The notes under the pieces were generated by a model. The model had not been told where the DNA came from and made no database searches. It worked only from the letters and a program-made list of their open reading frames with translations. This document shows, one piece after another, positions 3,260 through 47,421 of a DNA stretch of 64,000 nt. How positions within the stretch are numbered: the first letter of the stretch is position 1; the number at the start of each line of letters is the position of its first letter. Made by a program: the position numbers and the translations under genes. The stretch covers positions 1 to 64,000 of IMG/VR virus record IMGVR_UViG_3300042923_000601. One strand, 5' to 3'.

Positions 3260-3943
3260 TTAAATTTCGTTAGACAAAAACCCGCGAGTCGTATCATGCA
3301 GATTCGCGTATGCAAGGTTAAAGTTCAGCTCATCGCACAGGTCAAGTAGCACCGGGTGCTTGAGCTGAAGCTTTTCACCTACTGATTTAAAGTTGTACGT
3401 CAATTTAGAAAGAAAAAAAGAAACAGTTTCGATGTCAATCCGGCATCCGCACACAATGTCATAAACCATGTCGACATCGTGTATGAATACACTGGTAATA
3501 TCATTTGCTTCAATAAAAGACTCGACTGATCTTACATCGAAGATGTCGAGTACGACTTGTTCAGCGCGGGGTAATGTAGCTTCCACTTCAGGTAAAATCT
3601 CTACCCCGGCTATAACTAGTCGTTCAACAAACGTTTGCCCACAGGCAAGCTGTAACTGCTCGGCAATTTCTGTTTCAGGTGAAGATACGGTCACATCACG
3701 GTAGTGTTTTCGGATAAACTCGAAATACGAATCTTCTGTCACACCTGGATCGAGTAGACTCGCGGTATTCCGAGTTTCCGAACGTGCTGCAAGATAGATG
3801 TGCCCGAACTGGTCTACTTTGCTATACAAGGGATGTGTGAGACCAGCCCGAAGCATACGGTCAATGAACCCAACACTTTGGAAGAAGATTGTGTTGTAAT
3901 TGAGAACCAGTATTCGCTCAGGTCGTGTGCCGGTCATTGTCAT
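3260..3943 (-). CDS. Hypothetical protein
   Basis: 227-aa ORF collinear with neighbours in one operon. Confidence 0.7.
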   Translation of the reverse strand: MTMTGTRPERILVLNYNTIFFQSVGFIDRMLRAGLTHPLYSKVDQFGHIYLAARSETRNTASLLDPGVTEDSYFEFIRKHYRDVTVSSPETEIAEQLQLACGQTFVERLVIAGVEILPEVEATLPRAEQVVLDIFDVRSVESFIEANDITSVFIHDVDMVYDIVCGCRIDIETVSFFLSKLTYNFKSVGEKLQLKHPVLLDLCDELNFNLAYANLHDTTRGFLSNEI

Positions 3944-3970
3944 AATAGAGTACCCGGTACGTAAGTTATA

Positions 3971-4813
3971 TTACTGCTGCATTGCTGCAATCAGGTCATT
4001 AACTTCGCTTTCAGAGGTGTGAATGATTTCAGCACTGTACTTATTGGCATCGCGGTTTCCAGCATAGCGATTAGCATTACCAGCATCGGCATTGCCCCAG
4101 CTTGTGGATTGACGACCGCCAGAGCGGTTACCATTAGACGATTGGGAGAAGTCAACGCCAAGGGACGATGCAAGCTGCACCAAGCGGCCTTCCCAGATTT
4201 TACGATCAAACATTCCTTCTTCTTTGGCGGCATGTACACGGCCATTAGTCATACCGATAGCGTAGTCTTCGAGCGCGTCAAGGAACAGCTCGAATTCAAC
4301 GTTCTCAGCATCATGAGTGTAGCTGCCTGTTGCTGGATTGTAGTTCTTGATGTAAATGTCCGGATTGAAAACGTGTACCAGATACTTGTCTGTCTTTTTC
4401 TGATCGTCAACATCCGTATAAATAACAACTGCGATCGAGTCCGGATTTACATCCTGTAGCGACGCTGTAAGCGTTTCTTTCAGTTCACGGACTTGGATGA
4501 CCTGAATCAAGCCATGCGACAGACCAATTGCGAATCCTTCGAATTCACCGGTCTGTTCCAACTTTTCGAGCGCCTTGCGGCCGCGTTTAGCAATCTTTTT
4601 GCAATCCTTGGAGCCAATATATGCCTCAATACCTGATTTGTAGTCGAATTGGACAGGATTAGTGGACGCGTCTTTTGGCAGTCGGATTGCAATCTCAGCA
4701 GTTTTACTGAAGTAACGAATAGCCAGAGCTGTACGAGTCCGATTATTCTTGCTCTGAAAGCCAAACGTGTTACTTGTCCGTTCCTTCGAATTCTCATTGT
4801 TTGTAAATGCCAT
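3971..4813 (-). CDS. Hypothetical protein with low-complexity S/G/N tail
   Basis: 280 aa, AAGGAG RBS, AACA-N6-TG motif 44 nt upstream. Confidence 0.75.
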   Translation of the reverse strand: MAFTNNENSKERTSNTFGFQSKNNRTRTALAIRYFSKTAEIAIRLPKDASTNPVQFDYKSGIEAYIGSKDCKKIAKRGRKALEKLEQTGEFEGFAIGLSHGLIQVIQVRELKETLTASLQDVNPDSIAVVIYTDVDDQKKTDKYLVHVFNPDIYIKNYNPATGSYTHDAENVEFELFLDALEDYAIGMTNGRVHAAKEEGMFDRKIWEGRLVQLASSLGVDFSQSSNGNRSGGRQSTSWGNADAGNANRYAGNRDANKYSAEIIHTSESEVNDLIAAMQQ

Positions 4814-4856
4814 AACGTATCATTCTCCTTTTAAGTTGTGATTGTGGGTGAATCAT

Positions 4857-4868
4857 CAATAGCTTGTT
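4857..4868 (-). promoter_or_regulatory. Putative AACA-N6-TR promoter
   Basis: AACA-AGCTAT-TG on the minus strand, ahead of the 4813 start. Confidence 0.45.
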
Positions 4869-4955
4869 AGGGGAGTATCAATAAATAATGAGGGTGTATC
4901 GGGACTATGATATTTACCTCAATTTTGAAGTAAAAAATGAAAGGAGGTGATAAAA

Positions 4956-5339
4956 ATGGGTGCTGACACGCAGCTATTTTCATGGGAATCGCTAATGACG
5001 ATCAGTGGAGCGTCTCTATTAGTCTTTCTCATCGTGCAATACACCAAGCAACCCCTTCGTAAGATTCTTAAGTATGTCCCTACGGACTTGTACACCGCCT
5101 TTGTATCTTTCGTCATTTTAGTCACTGCTAGTCTTGCAGAAGACTCTAATACATGGTATGAATGGAAGATGTACGTACTGTGCTTCTTCAATTCATTCTT
5201 AATTGCATCAACGTCAAGTCACATTTACGCAAAAACAAAGAACCCTCCGGTATCCCGGAAGGCCAAAGAAGCAAAAAAAGAAGAGTCTGCCACCGAGAAT
5301 ACATATACGGAAAGCATAGAAGACTCCTCAGGATCATAG
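4956..5339 (+). CDS. Holin-like membrane protein
   Basis: ATG 4956 after AAAGGAGGTGA; three hydrophobic segments and a charged C-terminal tail. Confidence 0.55.
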   Translation: MGADTQLFSWESLMTISGASLLVFLIVQYTKQPLRKILKYVPTDLYTAFVSFVILVTASLAEDSNTWYEWKMYVLCFFNSFLIASTSSHIYAKTKNPPVSRKAKEAKKEESATENTYTESIEDSSGS

Positions 5340-8156: not shown

Positions 8157-8396
8157 TTACCCTATAATTCGTACATGATCAGACCGATATGGGAATCCCA
8201 CAGCATCCATTAGTCGAACGAACCCTGAGGTTACAAGGATGCGCCGTTTAGAGTCGTCATCCATCTTTCCCCATAATTTCTGAAGAAGGTTTCGACGGGA
8301 AGTACTTTCCTTTGTAAAAACACTCGGTTCTCTGACCAGTACTGACACAAATAACTGGTAAATCTCATCTTGATCAAATTCTTCAGCCATAAACAC
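8157..8396 (-). CDS. Hypothetical protein
   Basis: 79-aa ORF with GGGTGG RBS, in operon. Confidence 0.55.
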   Translation of the reverse strand: MFMAEEFDQDEIYQLFVSVLVREPSVFTKESTSRRNLLQKLWGKMDDDSKRRILVTSGFVRLMDAVGFPYRSDHVRIIG

Positions 8397-8411
8397 GACC
8401 CACCCTTCTCG

Positions 8412-8807
8412 TTATCCCATTATCATGGGTAATTCAGCTATCGCATAGGCGTCATGGTCGAACATGAGCCACTGGACGCCTGTTGCTTGAGCAAATCGGT
8501 ATACGCGCATTAGGTCTTCTGGTAAACCAATTGGATCAGGGACATCAGGGTCGTCCAGTACGAGTATGGTGAATCCATACTCTGACTTTGCATAGACAAT
8601 CAACCCGGATACCCCGTCTTCCACTTCTTGACGTAACCATTCATACGTGTCGTCCGATATGTGAATTGATGATATAACCATCATTCGCTGAATGACGTTT
8701 TCGTGATCAACCGTCACAATCGGTGTGGATATACGGTGTTCCTTATAAATCTTGATCACGGGTTTCATCATCTCTTTCCGACGCGTTAGGGAAATGGGTT
8801 TCCCCAA
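8412..8807 (-). CDS. DUF5983-like hypothetical protein
   Basis: ISSIHIS...VYAKSEYGF...LPEDLMRVYRFAQATGVQWLMFDHDA..IAELP pattern; true start may be about 8770. Confidence 0.55.
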   Translation of the reverse strand: MGKPISLTRRKEMMKPVIKIYKEHRISTPIVTVDHENVIQRMMVISSIHISDDTYEWLRQEVEDGVSGLIVYAKSEYGFTILVLDDPDVPDPIGLPEDLMRVYRFAQATGVQWLMFDHDAYAIAELPMIMG

Positions 8808-8928
8808 ACTCGCTTAACGCGTCGAGGAATTCTGTCATCTGACCGGCTCTTTCCTCAGGTGTAGTGTTAGCTAACACCGTATTCCGCCGGTCAACAAGCT
8901 TCTGATACCGTTCTTCTGGTGTCGACAT
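8743..8928 (-). CDS. Hypothetical protein
   Basis: 61-aa ORF with AAGGAGGGG RBS. Confidence 0.55.
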   Translation of the reverse strand: MSTPEERYQKLVDRRNTVLANTTPEERAGQMTEFLDALSEFGETHFPNASERDDETRDQDL

Positions 8929-41649: not shown

Positions 41650-42831
41650 CTACAGCGGGCGGTTAATAGCATACCGACGGCCGAAGATGTTACATGTACC
41701 AGCACATTTCAGATTCGGGATTTGAACCTTCGATTTCAGGTCAGCGCCTGATTGAAGTTTCGGATAATCCAGATGAATCTGGGAATGCTCATCCGAGTTA
41801 TTCAGGTATTCGCGGAACGTATCAGCCGTTTGCATAGCGATTTCGCGCTGAGCATTGCAGCAGATGCGCTCGAACGTTTTCAAGATAAAGTGCTCGTATG
41901 TACCGCGTTCAACGATGTCAACCATCGTCGCCTGTGGGTAGGACAAAGCGCCTCTGTAATTAAGGTCAACACGCCATTCGTCCTCAAATGGTTTGACGAT
42001 CTCAGGAACGTAATAGTCCTCAGCATCTTCATCCAGATAGAAGGAGTGATTCAGGGTACGATGCCGCTGCGCTTGAGCATATTGAGCTAAACTGCCCTTA
42101 TACGTCGTGCAATAGACATCCCCATAGTATGGTGTGAACTTCCGTTCATGCAGATGAAGCATGGACAGCTTCCGGTTTTTGAGCCTAGCATTCAGCTCGT
42201 CCACCCGGAATGGCTGCAGTGTATCCAGAAATTCTGGGATATAACTTGCAAGCTTCCCGCCGAATCCGCCGTCATATTTACCCGTAGAGGCGTCGATGTT
42301 GGCATCGTGGAAGTCTTCCAGCATATGAATCAGATAATTCAGTTGATGCAGGTTAGTTGTGTATACCATCGTTGTAGGTGTAAATACACTGAGTTGATAA
42401 CGAGCGTTTTCAATCGCGTATTTTGTCACCTGCAGTGGTGTAAGTTTAGGAAACTGTTCAGCAATGATCGGTGTCAGCTTGTCAATCCATTTACGATAGA
42501 CTACGCCTTCGTCACCCATTGCCTTCATCGTTGTATAACGTGCAGACTTCTCCGAGGTCGTATACATACCTTCGTTGTTCAGCAGCATGGCAAGCGCCTT
42601 CGGGATATCCGAAAAAACAAAGGTGTAATTCACATGACCATACACCGAGTGGTGTCCACTACCCAGTGTCTGGTCGATACGCCGCTGTGTGCGCTCGGTG
42701 TCTTCAGCCATAATAGCTTCGACGGTATCCTTCATGTAACATACTCCTGCGGCATGAGACGAGAACCCAAGGGCCTCGTCCAATGGCAGGATAAATTGCG
42801 GCTTCGTTGAGCCCATAACCACTGTCTTCAT
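41650..42831 (-). CDS. thyX: FAD-dependent thymidylate synthase ThyX (long form)
   Basis: GHHSVYGH, SEKSARYT, QAQRHRT, ERICCNAQREI. Confidence 0.85.
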   Translation of the reverse strand: MKTVVMGSTKPQFILPLDEALGFSSHAAGVCYMKDTVEAIMAEDTERTQRRIDQTLGSGHHSVYGHVNYTFVFSDIPKALAMLLNNEGMYTTSEKSARYTTMKAMGDEGVVYRKWIDKLTPIIAEQFPKLTPLQVTKYAIENARYQLSVFTPTTMVYTTNLHQLNYLIHMLEDFHDANIDASTGKYDGGFGGKLASYIPEFLDTLQPFRVDELNARLKNRKLSMLHLHERKFTPYYGDVYCTTYKGSLAQYAQAQRHRTLNHSFYLDEDAEDYYVPEIVKPFEDEWRVDLNYRGALSYPQATMVDIVERGTYEHFILKTFERICCNAQREIAMQTADTFREYLNNSDEHSQIHLDYPKLQSGADLKSKVQIPNLKCAGTCNIFGRRYAINRPL

Positions 42832-44014: not shown

Positions 44015-45205
44015 CTACTCGTTGATGAATAGGAGACTGTAGCTTGAAGACTTTGTCTTCTTGTAGGTCAGTGGATTCTTAAGCTGTTGTTTAACCTTCT
44101 CAAACATCAGTCCTGCGATAACAGAACCGCTTAGGATTGCAGCGTCATTCATGCTGACCATCCGGTAGTTAGAAGGTTCCTGTTTAACCGTCCAGTCTGG
44201 GATATCAAGCTCATTATTCTTATCCCGGATCAGGTTACGGATAATCATTTCAATGTGTACCGAAGGCGTCTGGATTCCCCCTTGACGGAAGAGCTTGTTC
44301 AGCACCTTGATGAATTCGTTATAGTCAGTTACACCATCCAGCATCTTCTTACCCTTCTGGATAAACTTCGTAAGCTGCTTGATTGGTTTAGTCAACTCGT
44401 TATTACTAACGCGCAGGAAGAAGAACGGCTCAGTAGCATCAATGTGCTTCAGTTCGATCAGGCATTCCTCTTCATCCGAGTCGATGCTGAAGAACTGACT
44501 GTCACGAAGAAGTCCATACATCTGCTTACTGAGGTATAGGTGCATGCCGGTTTCTTCCCGGATTTCAATCATCTCACCGGTTTTCTTGTCACGGAGCGTA
44601 ACCTTCTCCATGTAATAGTTGTCATATTTATCATAGGCTTCTTCCGACTCCATCTTGATGTCTTGCCGTAACATGACAATCACATACTTGGACTCTTTGA
44701 TCTCAGGGTTGAGCTTAAAGAGCCAGCCGTTTGTGTTGACCAAGATGTTGTAGGTGTCAATGAGCACAACCTTGGCGCTGTTTGTAGCAAGCGCATGTCG
44801 AGCAGATAGCCCCAGCTGCGTCTTTGCTTCATTTGTGTCGATACCTGCGAATTTACCTGCATGCATACCATAGTTTACGTTATAGAGTAAGCCGTAGCAT
44901 ACCTTGCAGATTTTACCGTTCTTCACACCGCAAGTAGCCGGTGATCGGAGTTCCACATTCTTACCAATAAGATGTGTATCCTTGGTGCTGATAACCTTGA
45001 ATTTCTTAGGGCCGACTTTCATAAACCGGCCGTCATAGCTTGTCAGATCAGCCTGCGAGTCAATACGTGTAGAGTACAGATTCACAGTGTCGCAGGAATA
45101 GTGTGGGTCTTCATTAAGCGTCACGTTCTCCGTTGCGAAGTTAATGTGGCGACCAAAGTACCCAGCTTCTGCTACACCCATCTGCATGATACTTGCCTTC
45201 CTACC
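44015..45205 (-). CDS. Multisubunit RNA polymerase beta-prime (C-terminal part), exon 2
   Basis: GRKA...AGYFGRH (bridge helix), LRSPATC...ICKVCYG zinc site, EAKTQLGLSARH (trigger loop), VHIEMIIRNL. Confidence 0.88.
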   Translation of the reverse strand, partial: GRKASIMQMGVAEAGYFGRHINFATENVTLNEDPHYSCDTVNLYSTRIDSQADLTSYDGRFMKVGPKKFKVISTKDTHLIGKNVELRSPATCGVKNGKICKVCYGLLYNVNYGMHAGKFAGIDTNEAKTQLGLSARHALATNSAKVVLIDTYNILVNTNGWLFKLNPEIKESKYVIVMLRQDIKMESEEAYDKYDNYYMEKVTLRDKKTGEMIEIREETGMHLYLSKQMYGLLRDSQFFSIDSDEEECLIELKHIDATEPFFFLRVSNNELTKPIKQLTKFIQKGKKMLDGVTDYNEFIKVLNKLFRQGGIQTPSVHIEMIIRNLIRDKNNELDIPDWTVKQEPSNYRMVSMNDAAILSGSVIAGLMFEKVKQQLKNPLTYKKTKSSSYSLLFINE

Positions 45206-46551
45206 TGGTACCTTCACATAGTTCATTACACTATGCAGTTCGCACGGTTTATACGCCGTTGAACTTCTCCGGTTTTTCTCCGGATGTCGAGACTATATCT
45301 TGTCCATAGGGAGACATAAGTCTTCCCCTTAGGACCCTGCCATTTCCATTTAAGAGCATCTCACTCACCCATTTGGGCCGTACGCCTGTTGCCGAATTGC
45401 ACGGCTACTCACTGTTGTCACAGCTTTCGGCTAGTCGTTGAACGTGCTACTATCATATCTTTGCAGATTCACGGAGTGGTTAGTCCCGTTAGTCTACTCC
45501 CCTTAAACTTTTATACAATGAATATATTTCTTCTTTGGTGAAGTATTGGTCTGATATACCTGGCTGAACTCGTTTTCGGTATACATTTTCCACAAAACCT
45601 ATATCAATAGCTAGTCGGCCTGCGATATAGTTATGAGGTCTTCCGGCTACCAAATATCTACAAACTGCATGAACTGTCTCGTCGTCATACTTTCGCTGAC
45701 GTTTGCGGTTTGGTTTGATATTGTATTGATCAGATATTGATTTGTACTTCTTACCAATTGCTATCTCAACCAATAGTGAGAAAAATCGTTTGTTGTCTTT
45801 AACGTTAGATGTGCCAATTATAGCGAGTCCAATCTGACCATAATCCCAATTATCAACTTCCATCATCTTACAGACCTGGTGTACTTGGTCATATGTTAAC
45901 TGGGATTTGATCAAACCATACTCTATGGCATGCATAGTGTTTCTATGAAACGATGCCCATTCCAGATTCTTGTAGTAGTTGTACGTTGAATCACCGCTTA
46001 GATGATTCACTATTGGTAAGTTATCGGGGTTAGGGATAAATGCTAGTGCAACAAGCCGACTGACCATGTAATATGACATGCCATTCGTAGTCCCAACCTC
46101 GCTCAATTTAACAACTACCTTAGGATAACCGGATTTATCAACTTTAGTTTGGAATTTTCTCTCTATACCACGGTCTTTAGAGTATAACCGACCATGGTTT
46201 GATATTAAATAACGTCCACTTATTGCATTGCCGTCTTTGGCGTCATATACCAGAGGACGCCATTCTTCTCTGTCTTTCGGTATCAATCTTAACATGATGT
46301 AATGTCATCCTCTCGTATTAACCTCCATCTCCAACTAGATTCATGATCATAGGGGGATATGATAATACTTCGCTGCTGATAGCACATTTGTTGCAACCCT
46401 TAGACTTACTATCGTCAATAGGTTAGACCTCACCTTGTTTCTGGTTTCCCTCCTGCATCCCGACCAAGGGATTAGGTGTGAGGATTAAGCGCGTCCCAGC
46501 AATTAGACAGGTTATTCAACTGAGCGTTTCCACCCAGAGGGGGCAGTTCTT
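45206..46551 (-). mobile_element. Group I (IA-type) self-splicing intron with HNH gene
   Basis: P AATTGCTGGGA 46494-46504, Q ATCAGCAGCG 46371-46380, R GTTCAACGACTA 45432-45443, S AAGATATAGTCT 45290-45301; P1 GGGU/GCCC with U.G wobble; extra helices between P7 and P3. The 3' boundary is uncertain by one base. Confidence 0.88.
45489..46295 (-). CDS. Intron-encoded NUMOD4-HNH homing endonuclease
   Basis: EEWRP...YLISNHGR (NUMOD4); VSRLVALAFIPNPDNLPIVNHLSGD...NLEW...N (HNH); lies in a loop closed by TATCATATC/GATATGATA. Confidence 0.9.
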   Translation of the reverse strand: MLRLIPKDREEWRPLVYDAKDGNAISGRYLISNHGRLYSKDRGIERKFQTKVDKSGYPKVVVKLSEVGTTNGMSYYMVSRLVALAFIPNPDNLPIVNHLSGDSTYNYYKNLEWASFHRNTMHAIEYGLIKSQLTYDQVHQVCKMMEVDNWDYGQIGLAIIGTSNVKDNKRFFSLLVEIAIGKKYKSISDQYNIKPNRKRQRKYDDETVHAVCRYLVAGRPHNYIAGRLAIDIGFVENVYRKRVQPGISDQYFTKEEIYSLYKSLRGVD

Positions 46552-47421
46552 ACCCACTGCATCTACATACGCTGACTGAGGAGTGTTCAAACCATCACCC
46601 ATAAGGCTGCTGTTTGTTACATTCGGAATGGTGTCTCCGGACAGTGTCGGTTTAAATCCAACGTTAACGAAGACCTCTTGAGCTTGATGTTTGTTGATTA
46701 CACCTGCACGAATCATTGGTTTGAGCGGGTTGTTATCATCCATTTCATTCAGCAAGATATCAAAGAGCCGATCTGTTTGTCCCCGTAGGAATTGTTCGGC
46801 TTCGTCCACCCGGAATTTATCTGGGTCATCCTCAATATGCGTATTAAGAATATCGTTCACTTCTTTATTGCGACGAGCCATCTTAAGCATATCAAAGATT
46901 GAAATGGAGTTACCGAACAGTGGCCCCATTGCGGTTGCCAGCTTATTCATGAAGACTTGTGTATCGTGATAGATTTCAGATAACCCAGCTGCTGTAAACT
47001 GATCTTTATGGTTATCGGCAAATCGGTCAAAGAACTTCTTATACTCCGCATTCGTAAAGTGTTTCGGTGCAAAGATATCATCCTCTGTAACCGCAATACC
47101 GGTTACGATGTATGGCCGCCACATAATCATATTGAAGACGAAATGCACAAACGGCATTTCGAGTAGTGGACCATCACTGTCAAGCTTATATGCCATTTTA
47201 AGTTGTCCCAAATCTTCCATTGAGATGGACATGTCTTTGCGAGTTTCGGTGATGAGCATATTTACATAAGACTCGTACTCGGAGACCTCTGCAAACTCAT
47301 TGATTACCGGACACAGCTTCATTCCGTTATCTGCTGCGCCATATGCACGTAGTCTACCTTCGATATCCGACAAGCTGTAGTTCCAGCCTGCTAATACCGA
47401 CCCCTTTTTCTTCTTACCCAT
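46552..47421 (-). CDS. RNA polymerase beta-prime (C-terminal part), exon 1
   Basis: Ends NSSLMGDGLN..SAYVDAVG, which continues into GRKA of exon 2; spliced product about 686 aa; no DFDGD motif. Confidence 0.82.

What the first reader, a model, noticed from the sequence alone, without database searches (positions are those of the whole stretch)
45200..45215. Intron 3' splice site seems to need a terminal A rather than G
P1 puts the 5' site after GTG GGT (46552, U.G pair). To stay in frame and restore V-G-G-R-K, exon 2 must begin at GGT (45205), so the intron ends ...GUACCA. A 3-bp P10 pairing (exon GGU with intron ACU) agrees. Using the G at 45205 as omega-G gives a frameshift and a quick stop. 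Terminal-A group I introns are very rare (one is known in Coxiella 23S rRNA). Alternatives are a 5' site shifted by one base (V-G-S-R-K) or a sequencing error.
Basis: inference. Interest (0 to 1): 0.62.

Follow-up and report, generated by a model that had tools for sequence, protein, structure and literature searches.

The report
Phage intron ending in A, not G
A self-splicing group I intron that interrupts an essential RNA polymerase gene of a giant phage has an A where almost every such intron has its last G, so it either splices with a terminal A (known once before, in Coxiella) or it is a damaged copy.

Summary
On the minus strand, a 1346-nt group I intron (46551..45206) carries an HNH homing-endonuclease gene. 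It splits the gene for the C-terminal half of the non-virion RNA polymerase beta' subunit, at the start of the bridge helix.

Eleven intron-less homologues read G-[G/A]-R-K across this point with no length change. The same intron family at the same codon in other phages fixes the 5' splice site after U46552. This is a U.G pair at a fixed distance from P2.

Only an intron ending at A45206 then restores ...DAVG|GRKAS.... Using G45205 gives a stop after 10 codons.

Three further lines put A45206 at the omega position:
- P10 pairs GGU with ACU, with a compensatory change in a relative.
- The family's tail template is GAAG-N4-Y-G.
- A covarying omega-1/J7/9 pair is present.

All 34 other family tails have a G within one base of that position. 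The P7 G-binding pair is unchanged.

An independent Logan assembly has the identical sequence. A read-level error or a defective allele cannot be excluded.

The best reading is a natural omega-A intron, not experimentally proven.

The parts
46552..47421 (-). Exon 1 of the non-virion RNAP beta' C-terminal-half gene (AR9 g154 homologue), 290 codons ending ...YVDAVG. The open frame runs 11 codons into the intron, to a stop at 46516.
   Evidence: tblastn to AR9, PBS1, BpSp and phiR1-37 beta' genes. phrog_3015 profile positions 28-232. GGGAGG Shine-Dalgarno sequence before the ATG.
45206..46551 (-). Group I intron, 1346 nt, of IA type (hairpins between P7 and P3'). Its endonuclease ORF sits in the P6a loop.
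   Evidence: Boundaries come from the abutting homology of exons 1 and 2. The core is aligned with the family. The ORF-less same-site homologue L014a scores 54.6 bits on RF00028. The window itself scores 14.4 bits.
46541..46555 (-). P1 hairpin. Exon G46555, G46554, G46553 and U46552 pair with the guide G46544, C46543, C46542, C46541, with U46552.G46544 at the splice site. A46551-U46545 extends the helix. Guide bases 46545-46547 (UCA read 3'->5', i.e. 5'-ACU-3') form P10.
   Evidence: Direct reading. Same P1 in L012 and L014a, and a fixed register of the wobble G in 7 family introns.
46520..46537 (-). P2: CUGGGUG-GAAA-CGCUCAG.
   Evidence: RNAalifold finds 7 pairs; 6 of them keep pairing through changes on both sides.
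46506..46511 (-). P3 5' strand CCUGUC. It pairs with GGCAGG at 45336-45341.
   Evidence: Read from alignments A1 and A2. The pair covaries: L014a has UCUGUC/GGCAGA and L014b has UCUGCU/AGCAGA.
45489..46295 (-). Intron-encoded HNH homing endonuclease, 268 aa, intact, with an N-terminal NUMOD4-like part.
   Evidence: phrog_59 HNH endonuclease at 1.1e-26. Pfam NUMOD4 at 7e-4, below the cut-off. Homologues carry PF07463 and PF13392.
45432..45436 (-). P7 5' strand GACUA. It includes G45436 of the G-binding pair, whose partner is C45291.
   Evidence: RNAalifold P7, with two compensatory pairs in L012. The G-C pair is invariant and unchanged in the window.
45286..45301 (-). J8/7, the P7 3' strand and J7/9: AAGAUA-UAGUC-UCGAC. 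G45288 is the proposed P9.0 partner of C45207.
   Evidence: Single exact hit in the window. Covariation of the J7/9 base with omega-1 across the family.
45216..45284 (-). P9 (45268-45284), P9.1 with an inner hairpin (45237-45265), and P9.2 (45216-45236).
   Evidence: RNAalifold consensus with compensatory changes in P9 and P9.2. The window keeps 48 of 52 consensus pairs.
45206..45215 (-). 3' tail GAAGGUACCA. A45206 is at the omega position and C45207 at omega-1.
   Evidence: Family template GAAG-N4-Y-G: G at that position in 28 of 34 unique tails, one base earlier in 4, one base later in 2. L067 has the near-identical tail GAUACCG|GGU.
45203..45205 (-). First exon-2 codon, GGU. It forms P10 with 46545-46547.
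   Evidence: Direct reading. L012 has GGA/UCU and L014a has GG/CU.
44015..45205 (-). Exon 2, 396 codons: GRKASIMQMGVAEAGYFGRH... (bridge helix onward).
   Evidence: tblastn to AR9 and others, with the match starting at residue 1 and abutting the exon-1 match. phrog_3015 profile positions 246-647. Pfam Rpb1_5 at 4.6e-4, below the cut-off.

Best explanation
A mobile group I intron carrying an HNH homing endonuclease sits between the two Gly codons of ...D-A-V-G|G-R-K-A..., at the N-terminal end of the bridge helix, in the gene for the C-terminal half of a jumbo phage's non-virion RNA polymerase beta' subunit.

Proposed mechanism:
1. Exogenous G attacks after U46552, which is the U.G wobble pair of P1. 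This is inferred from family homology.
2. For exon ligation, P10 (exon GGU with guide ACU) and a one-pair P9.0 (C45207 with G45288) place A45206 in the unaltered P7 G-binding site, not a G.
3. The 5' exon then attacks after that A and yields the in-frame mRNA. This is inferred from the reading frame, homology and the family template.

The G pocket is unchanged and a competing G follows immediately at +1. Ligation after the A is therefore expected to be slow and probably accompanied by mis-splicing. This would resemble the Coxiella Cbu.L1917 'natural splice mutant'.
For: Gene identity and the exact junction:
- The exon-1 and exon-2 matches abut to the base in AR9, PBS1, BpSp, phiR1-37 and LPJP1.
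- They also abut in three 58%-identical metagenomic relatives without an intron here.
- Close relatives read KGGRKA or QGARKA, and Listeria phage LPJP1 reads DAVG|GRKA.

Intron identity:
- The core is conserved, with compensatory changes in P2, P3, P7, P7.1/7.2, P8, P9 and P9.2.
- The ORF-less same-site homologue scores 54.6 bits, E 3.6e-13, on RF00028.

5' splice site:
- The wobble G is at the same register in 7 family introns.
- P1 is identical in L012 and L014a, whose reading frames require cleavage after that U.

Omega position:
- Only A45206 gives the homologous protein with that 5' splice site.
- P10 is 3 bp only in this register, and its third pair is compensated relative to L012.
- A45206 sits at the modal omega position, used by 28 of 34 unique family tails.
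- C45207 matches the C-G / U-A covariation with J7/9: 18 of 18 in the A class and 13 of 16 in the G class, Fisher p about 1e-8 to 6e-7. The sequences are related, so the p value is only indicative.
- L067 has the tail GAUACCG|GGU.

The sequence is real at assembly level. Logan contig SRR35179801_11772 is 100% identical over 7212 nt, including this site.

The ribozyme is not decayed (48 of 52 consensus pairs) and the endonuclease ORF is intact.
Against: - No RNA data exist, so ligation after an A is inferred only.
- The three other same-site introns (L012, L014a, L133) all read A-G|G-G-N. The window's CCAGGU could therefore equally be that motif with one G missing, in which case G45205 (omega-1 = A) looks like the 'natural' omega and gives a frameshift.
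- The P7 G-binding pair shows no compensating change. From general knowledge of Tetrahymena G414A mutants, an A should bind poorly there and an adjacent G is a likely cryptic site.
- The two assemblies may derive from the same reads.
- The contigs from a second sample do not cover the site.
Confidence: 0.55

Rival explanations
1. The A is real, but the allele is a splice mutant. The ribozyme ligates mainly after the adjacent G45205, or stalls after step 1, giving a frameshifted beta' (stop after 10 codons). The genome is then crippled or hypomorphic: a recent mutation caught in the assembly, surviving on a minor in-frame product or by complementation in co-infection.
For: G45205 has the same local context (A-G|G) as omega in L012, L014a and L133. 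The G pocket is unchanged. The frameshift was verified. Omega one base later than the mode occurs in 2 of 34 family tails.
Against: The base is the consensus of a 246-kb contig, and a second assembly reproduces it. The gene is the single detectable beta'C homologue of an essential polymerase. With omega = G45205, P10 drops to one G.U pair. The rest of the intron, the endonuclease ORF and both exons are intact.
Confidence: 0.18
2. Sequence error in the reads. The true sequence has GGG (ACCAG|GGU), or a G at 45206, and the intron is ordinary.
For: All three same-site relatives have an AGGG run here, and one extra G would make the window canonical.
Against: Two different assemblers give identical sequence over 7.2 kb. 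ORFs up to 1265 aa in the window are unbroken, so the indel error rate is very low. The existing tail has exactly the modal family length, with C at omega-1. That pattern fits a G-to-A substitution better than a missing base.
Confidence: 0.07
3. A cryptic in-frame 3' site is used. Omega = G45212, the last G of the invariant GAAG, with the normal 5' site. The protein then carries Val-Pro inserted before G-R-K (DAVG-VP-GRKA, 688 aa).
For: It is in frame, with a canonical U.G pair and a canonical terminal G. The local context A-G|G-U-A is the same as at 45205.
Against: No homologue has any insertion at this point. The tail would be 4 nt, against 9-11 nt in all 34 family members. GAAG is invariant inside the intron in the whole family. 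P10 would be reduced to one G.U pair.
Confidence: 0.08
4. Both splice sites are shifted by one base. Cleavage occurs after A46551 (A-U pair) and omega = G45205, giving V-G-S-R-K.
For: It is in frame and has the same length as the homologues. The guide UGCCC pairs with GGGUA, and AC pairs with exon GU. A distant Staphylococcus phage has Ser at the aligned position.
Against: Cleavage would not be at the U.G wobble, which sits at a fixed register in all 7 family introns examined. The two same-site relatives with identical P1, including the same A-U extension, must cleave after the U to stay in frame. Most relatives have G or A at this position, never S; a few more distant ones read K-G-R-K or A-G-R-K. 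The nearest ones have GGT there at DNA level.
Confidence: 0.05
5. Genes in pieces. The intron no longer needs to splice, and the two halves are translated separately (301 aa, and 403 aa from ATG 45226) and assemble into the polymerase.
For: Both halves are open ORFs. The ATG lies in the P9.2 loop, where the family consensus has GCG or ACG.
Against: There is no Shine-Dalgarno sequence before ATG 45226, whereas 43 of 66 long ORFs in the window, including exon 1, have GGAG-type sites. The break would fall at the first turn of the bridge helix. The ribozyme core is fully conserved.
Confidence: 0.04

Closest known systems
Coxiella burnetii 23S rRNA intron Cbu.L1917 (Raghavan et al. 2007, J Bacteriol 189:6572). 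[quoted passage not shown] Details of its slower splicing are from my memory of the 2009 'natural splice mutant' paper, which is not held in the library.
   Same: A bacterial-type group I intron whose 3'-terminal nucleotide is A instead of G, with an otherwise canonical core and, as far as I recall, an unaltered G-binding site.
   Different: Cbu.L1917 is in an rRNA gene of a bacterium, and splicing there was shown experimentally. The intron here is in a phage protein-coding gene, where the reading frame gives independent evidence for the junction. It carries an HNH endonuclease, has a G at +1 that competes, and nothing has been shown at the RNA level.
PhiPA3 gp210 intron: an HNH homing endonuclease inside a putative group I intron in a jumbo-phage RNA polymerase beta-subunit gene (Birkholz et al. 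2024, PMC11620839).
   Same: A mobile group I intron with a nicking-type HNH endonuclease, inserted at a highly conserved catalytic-region codon of a multisubunit RNAP gene of a jumbo phage.
   Different: The subunit differs (beta versus beta'), the phage clade differs (PhiKZ-like versus AR9/PBS1-like), and the insertion site differs. No unusual terminal nucleotide is reported there.
Phage IA2 introns with the ORF in P6a (T4 td) and HNH-ORF introns of Bacillus phages (SPO1/SP82 I-HmuI, Bastille I-BasI). These are from general knowledge; the references are listed in PMC11620839.
   Same: Overall architecture: P1-P10, extra hairpins between P7 and P3', ORF looped out of P6a, J8/7-P7 sequence AAGAUAUAGUC, and an I-HmuI-like NUMOD4/HNH endonuclease.
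   Different: Those introns end in G. The family here has a characteristic 3' domain (GAGAAGUUCA...GAACUG, P9.2, GAAG-N4-Y-G tail) that I did not find described.
Same-family introns at the same codon in uncultured relatives: L012 (Ga0182745_1000033), L014 intron 1 (ANAN16-1 scaffold_332) and L133 (ERR12726941).
   Same: Same insertion point (G|G-R/L-K-A), same P1 (GGGU/GCCC), same P10 register, and a homologous core.
   Different: All three end ...A-G followed by GG. The window has one G fewer, or an A in place of the terminal G.

Membership tests
Group I intron (Rfam RF00028) | Conserved catalytic core (P3-P8, J8/7, P7) recognisable by the covariance model. | tested here: met
   The window scores only 14.4 bits, E 1.5, with the ORF in the way. 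The homologous ORF-less intron at the same site (L014a) scores 54.6 bits against a gathering score of 50, E 3.6e-13, over the full model. The window aligns to it helix by helix.
Group I intron (Rfam RF00028) | 5' splice site after a U that forms a U.G wobble in P1 with the internal guide sequence. | tested here: met
   U46552.G46544 preceded by three G-C pairs. The register is identical in 7 family introns.
Group I intron (Rfam RF00028) | 3'-terminal guanosine (omega-G) immediately before the 3' exon. | tested here: not met
   The only junction that restores the homologous protein with the canonical 5' site ends in A45206. 34 of 34 other family tails have a G within one base of that position, 28 of them exactly at it.
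Group I intron (Rfam RF00028) | P10 pairing between the guide sequence and the start of the 3' exon. | tested here: met
   GGU (45205-45203) pairs with ACU (46547-46545), 3 bp. L012 has GGA/UCU, a compensatory third pair.
Group I intron (Rfam RF00028) | G-binding G-C pair in P7. | tested here: met
   G45436-C45291 is invariant in the 7 aligned family members. The neighbouring P7 pairs covary in L012.
Group I intron (Rfam RF00028) | Self-splicing by two transesterifications. | not testable with these tools
   Needs in vitro transcription and splicing, or cDNA.
Subgroup IA (P7.1/P7.2) | Two extra hairpins between the P7 5' strand and the P3 3' strand. | tested here: met
   RNAalifold predicts covarying hairpins at alignment A1 columns 19-38 and 44-58, plus others before P3'. 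I did not test a finer assignment such as IA2.
Omega-A group I introns (Coxiella Cbu.L1917 type) | Terminal A used in exon ligation while exogenous G is used in step 1. | not testable with these tools
   Only the genomic A and the frame argument are available.
HNH homing endonuclease (I-HmuI-like, NUMOD4 + HNH_3) | HNH motif and family profile match, encoded inside the intron. | tested here: met
   phrog_59 at 1.1e-26 and phrog_959 at 7.5e-21. NUMOD4 at 7e-4, below the Pfam cut-off. Homologues carry PF07463 and PF13392. The ORF lies in the P6a loop (46367-46356 / 45459-45448).
Jumbo-phage non-virion RNAP beta' C-terminal subunit (AR9 g154) | Homology over both exons, including the bridge-helix motif G-x-R-K...G-Y. 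| tested here: met
   tblastn to AR9 g154 at 1e-6 (exon 1) and 6e-25 (exon 2), with the matches abutting. phrog_3015 at 1.6e-40. Pfam Rpb1_5 at 4.6e-4, below the cut-off.

The most novel reading that the evidence does not exclude
This is a second natural group I intron that ligates its exons after a terminal A, and the first in a protein-coding gene or a virus. P10 and a covarying P9.0 pair, rather than the identity of the omega nucleotide, set the 3' splice site, even with a competing G at +1. Slow or leaky ligation might throttle production of the phage polymerase subunit.
Probability: 0.5. Interest if true: 0.65.

Novelty: new variant of a known kind. Interest (0 to 1): 0.55.

Why it matters
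The terminal G is among the most conserved nucleotides of group I introns, because it occupies the same pocket as the guanosine cofactor. The only natural exception I could document in the literature held here is Coxiella's rRNA intron.

A phage case in a protein gene would help in three ways:
- The correct junction can be read from the protein frame, which is not possible in rRNA.
- It offers a natural system with isogenic-like relatives ending in G (L012, L014a, L067 tails), for asking how far P10 and P9.0 can substitute for omega-G.
- It bears on annotation, because pipelines that look for a terminal G would mis-join this essential polymerase gene.

If it turns out to be a read error or a dead allele, it is of no wider interest.

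Tried and rejected
- **Rfam at gathering threshold on the whole window:** nothing found. The window's intron is seen only at E 1.5.
- **megablast of the locus against phage genomes:** no match.
- **Other copies of the intron core in the window:** none.
- **Independent samples covering the 3' site:**
  - A metagenome scan with a window-specific 25-mer found nothing.
  - Sample 3300042934 has a 99.5-99.8% identical strain, but its contigs stop at 46430 and restart at 44928.
  - Cluster look-up and a search with the endonuclease gave no near-identical variants.
- **Intron-less allele of this phage:** a scan with the ligated-junction pattern found none.
- **Closer relatives of the tail:** a scan for GAACTATGTGAAGGTAC gave only chance hits.
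- **Same-site introns in metagenomes:** a pattern scan recovered only the L012 and L014 types already known.
- **Papers:** the Coxiella papers could not be read.
- **Junction models considered and rejected:**
  - Omega = G45204 gives an immediate stop.
  - 5'SS G46553 with omega = G45204 gives V-G-R-K, which is one residue short and has no U.G pair.
  - A -1 ribosomal frameshift on the mis-spliced mRNA would need a slippery heptamer, and there is none at G GGU GUA (direct reading).
Full report
**What is there**

The window is part of a 246,689-bp IMG/VR contig, IMGVR_UViG_3300042923_000601. On the minus strand there are two ORFs. One is 47421..46516 (301 aa) and the other is 45226..44015 (403 aa).

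Both ORFs match a single gene in AR9, PBS1, BpSp, phiR1-37, several Staphylococcus jumbo phages and Listeria phage LPJP1. That gene encodes the C-terminal half of the non-virion RNA polymerase beta' subunit (AR9 g154). Both pieces also hit the same PHROG family. Exon 1 covers profile positions 28-232 and exon 2 covers positions 246-647 of phrog_3015.

In AR9, PBS1, BpSp and phiR1-37, the match to exon 1 ends at the base before the match to exon 2 begins. The same is true in three 58%-identical metagenomic relatives that have no insertion here: L007, L008 and L010.

Between the two pieces lies a 268-aa HNH endonuclease ORF at 46295..45489 (phrog_59, 1.1e-26). It is flanked by RNA with the hallmarks of a group I intron, for example AAGAUAUAGUC at J8/7-P7.

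**The junction demanded by homology**

Across the break, homologues read:
- Y-[IV]-[DN]-A-x-G-[AG]-R-K-A, with no length variation;
- KGGRKA or QGARKA in the close relatives;
- DAVG|GRKA in LPJP1, where the DNA is GGT|GGT AGA AAA.

The window has ...GCA GTG GGT followed by the intron, and then ...GTACCA followed by GGT AGG AAG GCA.

Joined frames were computed:

| 5' splice site | Omega (last intron base) | Result |
|---|---|---|
| after U46552 | A45206 | 686 aa, DAVGGRKAS |
| after U46552 | G45205 | stop after 10 codons |
| after A46551 | G45205 | VGSRK, 686 aa |
| after U46552 | G45204 | immediate stop |
| after G46553 | G45204 | V-G-R-K, one residue short |

**The intron family**

The same intron occurs at the same codon in other uncultured phages:
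- L012 ends ...GAAGGAUAG|GGACUC.
- L014 intron 1 ends ...GAAGGCUAAG|GGCCGC.
- L133 ends ...AAAACUAG|GGUCGU.

L014 has a twin copy 20 codons downstream. The closest relative phage, L127, has two further copies at other codons of this gene.

A pattern from J7/9-P9 (TCTCRAC-N16-GAGAAGTTCA) retrieved about 35 distinct copies in viral contigs.

RNAalifold on seven members gives P2, P7, extra hairpins between P7 and P3' (IA type), P8, P9, P9.1 and P9.2, with many compensatory changes. P3 (CCUGUC/GGCAGG) also covaries, as read from alignments A1 and A2.

The ORF-less L014 copy passes the Rfam threshold for Intron_gpI at 54.6 bits, E 3.6e-13. The window copy keeps 48 of 52 consensus pairs in the 3' domain, so the ribozyme does not look decayed.

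**5' splice site**

In all seven introns, the guide G that pairs with the splice-site U sits at one fixed register: G-NNN-C-[C/U]-U-[U/C]-U before P2.

The window, L012 and L014a share P1 GGGU/GCCC and the same A-U extension. In L012 and L014a the reading frame requires cleavage after that U. I therefore place the window's 5' site after U46552. This disfavours the VGSRK alternative.

**3' splice site**

Three independent features put A45206 at the omega position:

1. **P10.** Exon GGU pairs with guide ACU as G.U, G-C and U-A, directly stacked on P1. L012 has GGA/UCU, so the third pair is compensated. With G45205 or G45212 as omega, only one G.U pair remains.
2. **Tail length.** After P9.2 the family has GAAG-N4-Y-G. 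The G is at that position in 28 of 34 unique tails, one base earlier in 4, and one base later in 2. The window reads GAAG-GUAC-C-A. L067 reads GAAG-AUAC-C-G|GGU.
3. **P9.0-like pair.** The base before omega covaries with the third base of J7/9, UC[G/A]AC. All 18 A-class tails have U. Of the 16 G-class tails, 13 have C (Fisher p 1e-8 to 6e-7). This is indicative only, because the sequences are related. The window is G-class and has C45207.

Against this, the three same-site relatives are among the exceptions. They have A before omega and read AG|GG. The window's CCAGGU could therefore be that motif minus one G, with G45205 as the 'structural' omega.

Either history (G-to-A substitution or loss of one G) leaves the same present sequence. 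With that sequence, an in-frame product with the canonical 5' site needs ligation after the A, or use of the distant cryptic G45212.

**Is the base real?**

A Logan assembly of run SRR35179801 (contig 239,339 bp, a different assembler) is 100% identical over 7212 nt, including the site.

The window has unbroken ORFs up to 1265 aa, so indel errors are rare.

I could not find a second sample covering the site. I cannot tell whether the two assemblies share reads.

**How it most likely works**

The P7 G-binding pair G45436-C45291 and its neighbours are identical to those of relatives that end in G. Step 1 should therefore use guanosine as usual. In step 2 an A would have to occupy a pocket built for G.

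From established knowledge of Tetrahymena omega mutants, and from the Coxiella Cbu.L1917 case, this predicts slow ligation and some use of neighbouring Gs. The Coxiella paper's title was confirmed. The kinetic details are from memory.

Three points argue that enough correct mRNA is made:
- the polymerase subunit is essential;
- the base is the assembly consensus;
- the intron, its endonuclease gene and both exons are intact.

I give 0.55 to productive omega-A splicing. The rest is divided among:
- a defective or hypomorphic allele (0.18);
- the cryptic G45212 site (0.08);
- read error (0.07);
- shifted sites (0.05);
- separate translation of the halves (0.04).

Separate translation is weak because ATG 45226 lies in the P9.2 loop and has no Shine-Dalgarno sequence. 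By contrast, 43 of 66 long ORFs in the window have one.

**Comparison with known systems**

Mobile group I introns with HNH endonucleases in jumbo-phage RNAP genes are known, for example PhiPA3 gp210 (PMC11620839). Phage IA introns with the ORF in P6a are classical.

What is unusual here is only the terminal nucleotide. The one documented natural precedent I could find is Coxiella's rRNA intron. I rate this a new variant of a known kind.

Noticed in passing
L009:3294-3884; L012:4369-4972; L014:3334-3796 and 3849-5089; L127:6880-7807 and ~8169-8832; L133:1-1244: The beta'C gene of this phage clade is an intron hot spot. Introns of one family sit at five or more different codons: upstream near residue 255; G|GRK; RKAA|V; GYFS|R; and TNE-S. 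There are up to two per gene, and the twin copies in L014 look nearly identical. ORFs P0017 and P0020 break after LSARHAL, which suggests a further site.
   Followed up: partly
L012:4973-4981 (also L011): Exon 2 of the same-site relative reads G-L-K-A (CUC), where every other homologue has the conserved Arg of the bridge-helix G-x-R-K motif. The change is a single G-to-U difference from CGC.
   Followed up: no
window 45150-45200 (-): This clade has one residue fewer between R-K and G-Y of the bridge helix (RKASIMQMGVAEAGY) than AR9, more distant relatives and E. coli beta'. The close relatives all share the shorter form. The comparison with E. coli is from memory.
   Followed up: partly
window 45224-45226 (-): The ATG that opens the 403-aa 'exon 2 ORF' lies in the P9.2 loop, where the family consensus is UAGCGA or UAACGA and the window has UAAUGA. 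It is in frame with exon 2 only because the run here is GG rather than GGG. It has no Shine-Dalgarno sequence.
   Followed up: partly
window 46430 and 44928 (contigs L128 and L083, sample 3300042934): A 99.5-99.8% identical strain in a second sample also carries the intron's 5' end. Its contigs stop inside the intron and resume 277 nt into exon 2. This could reflect low coverage or a polymorphism or repeat in the intron or endonuclease region.
   Followed up: partly
window 41650-42831 (-): There is a ThyX (Pfam Thy1) gene three genes downstream of the beta' gene. L012 has a ThyA-type gene in the same neighbourhood. AR9 and PBS1 relatives use uracil DNA, so this clade may differ. The uracil-DNA point is from memory.
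   Followed up: no
family loci, e.g. L023, L040, L046 (viral contigs): The same intron family, with a highly conserved 3' domain (GAGAAGUUCAUAAGAGAACUG...GAAGAUAYUG), is spread over many unrelated phage contigs and genes. Several sit in what look like topoisomerase/gyrase-type motifs (..PIRGK..). The family is detected poorly by RF00028 when it carries an ORF.
   Followed up: no
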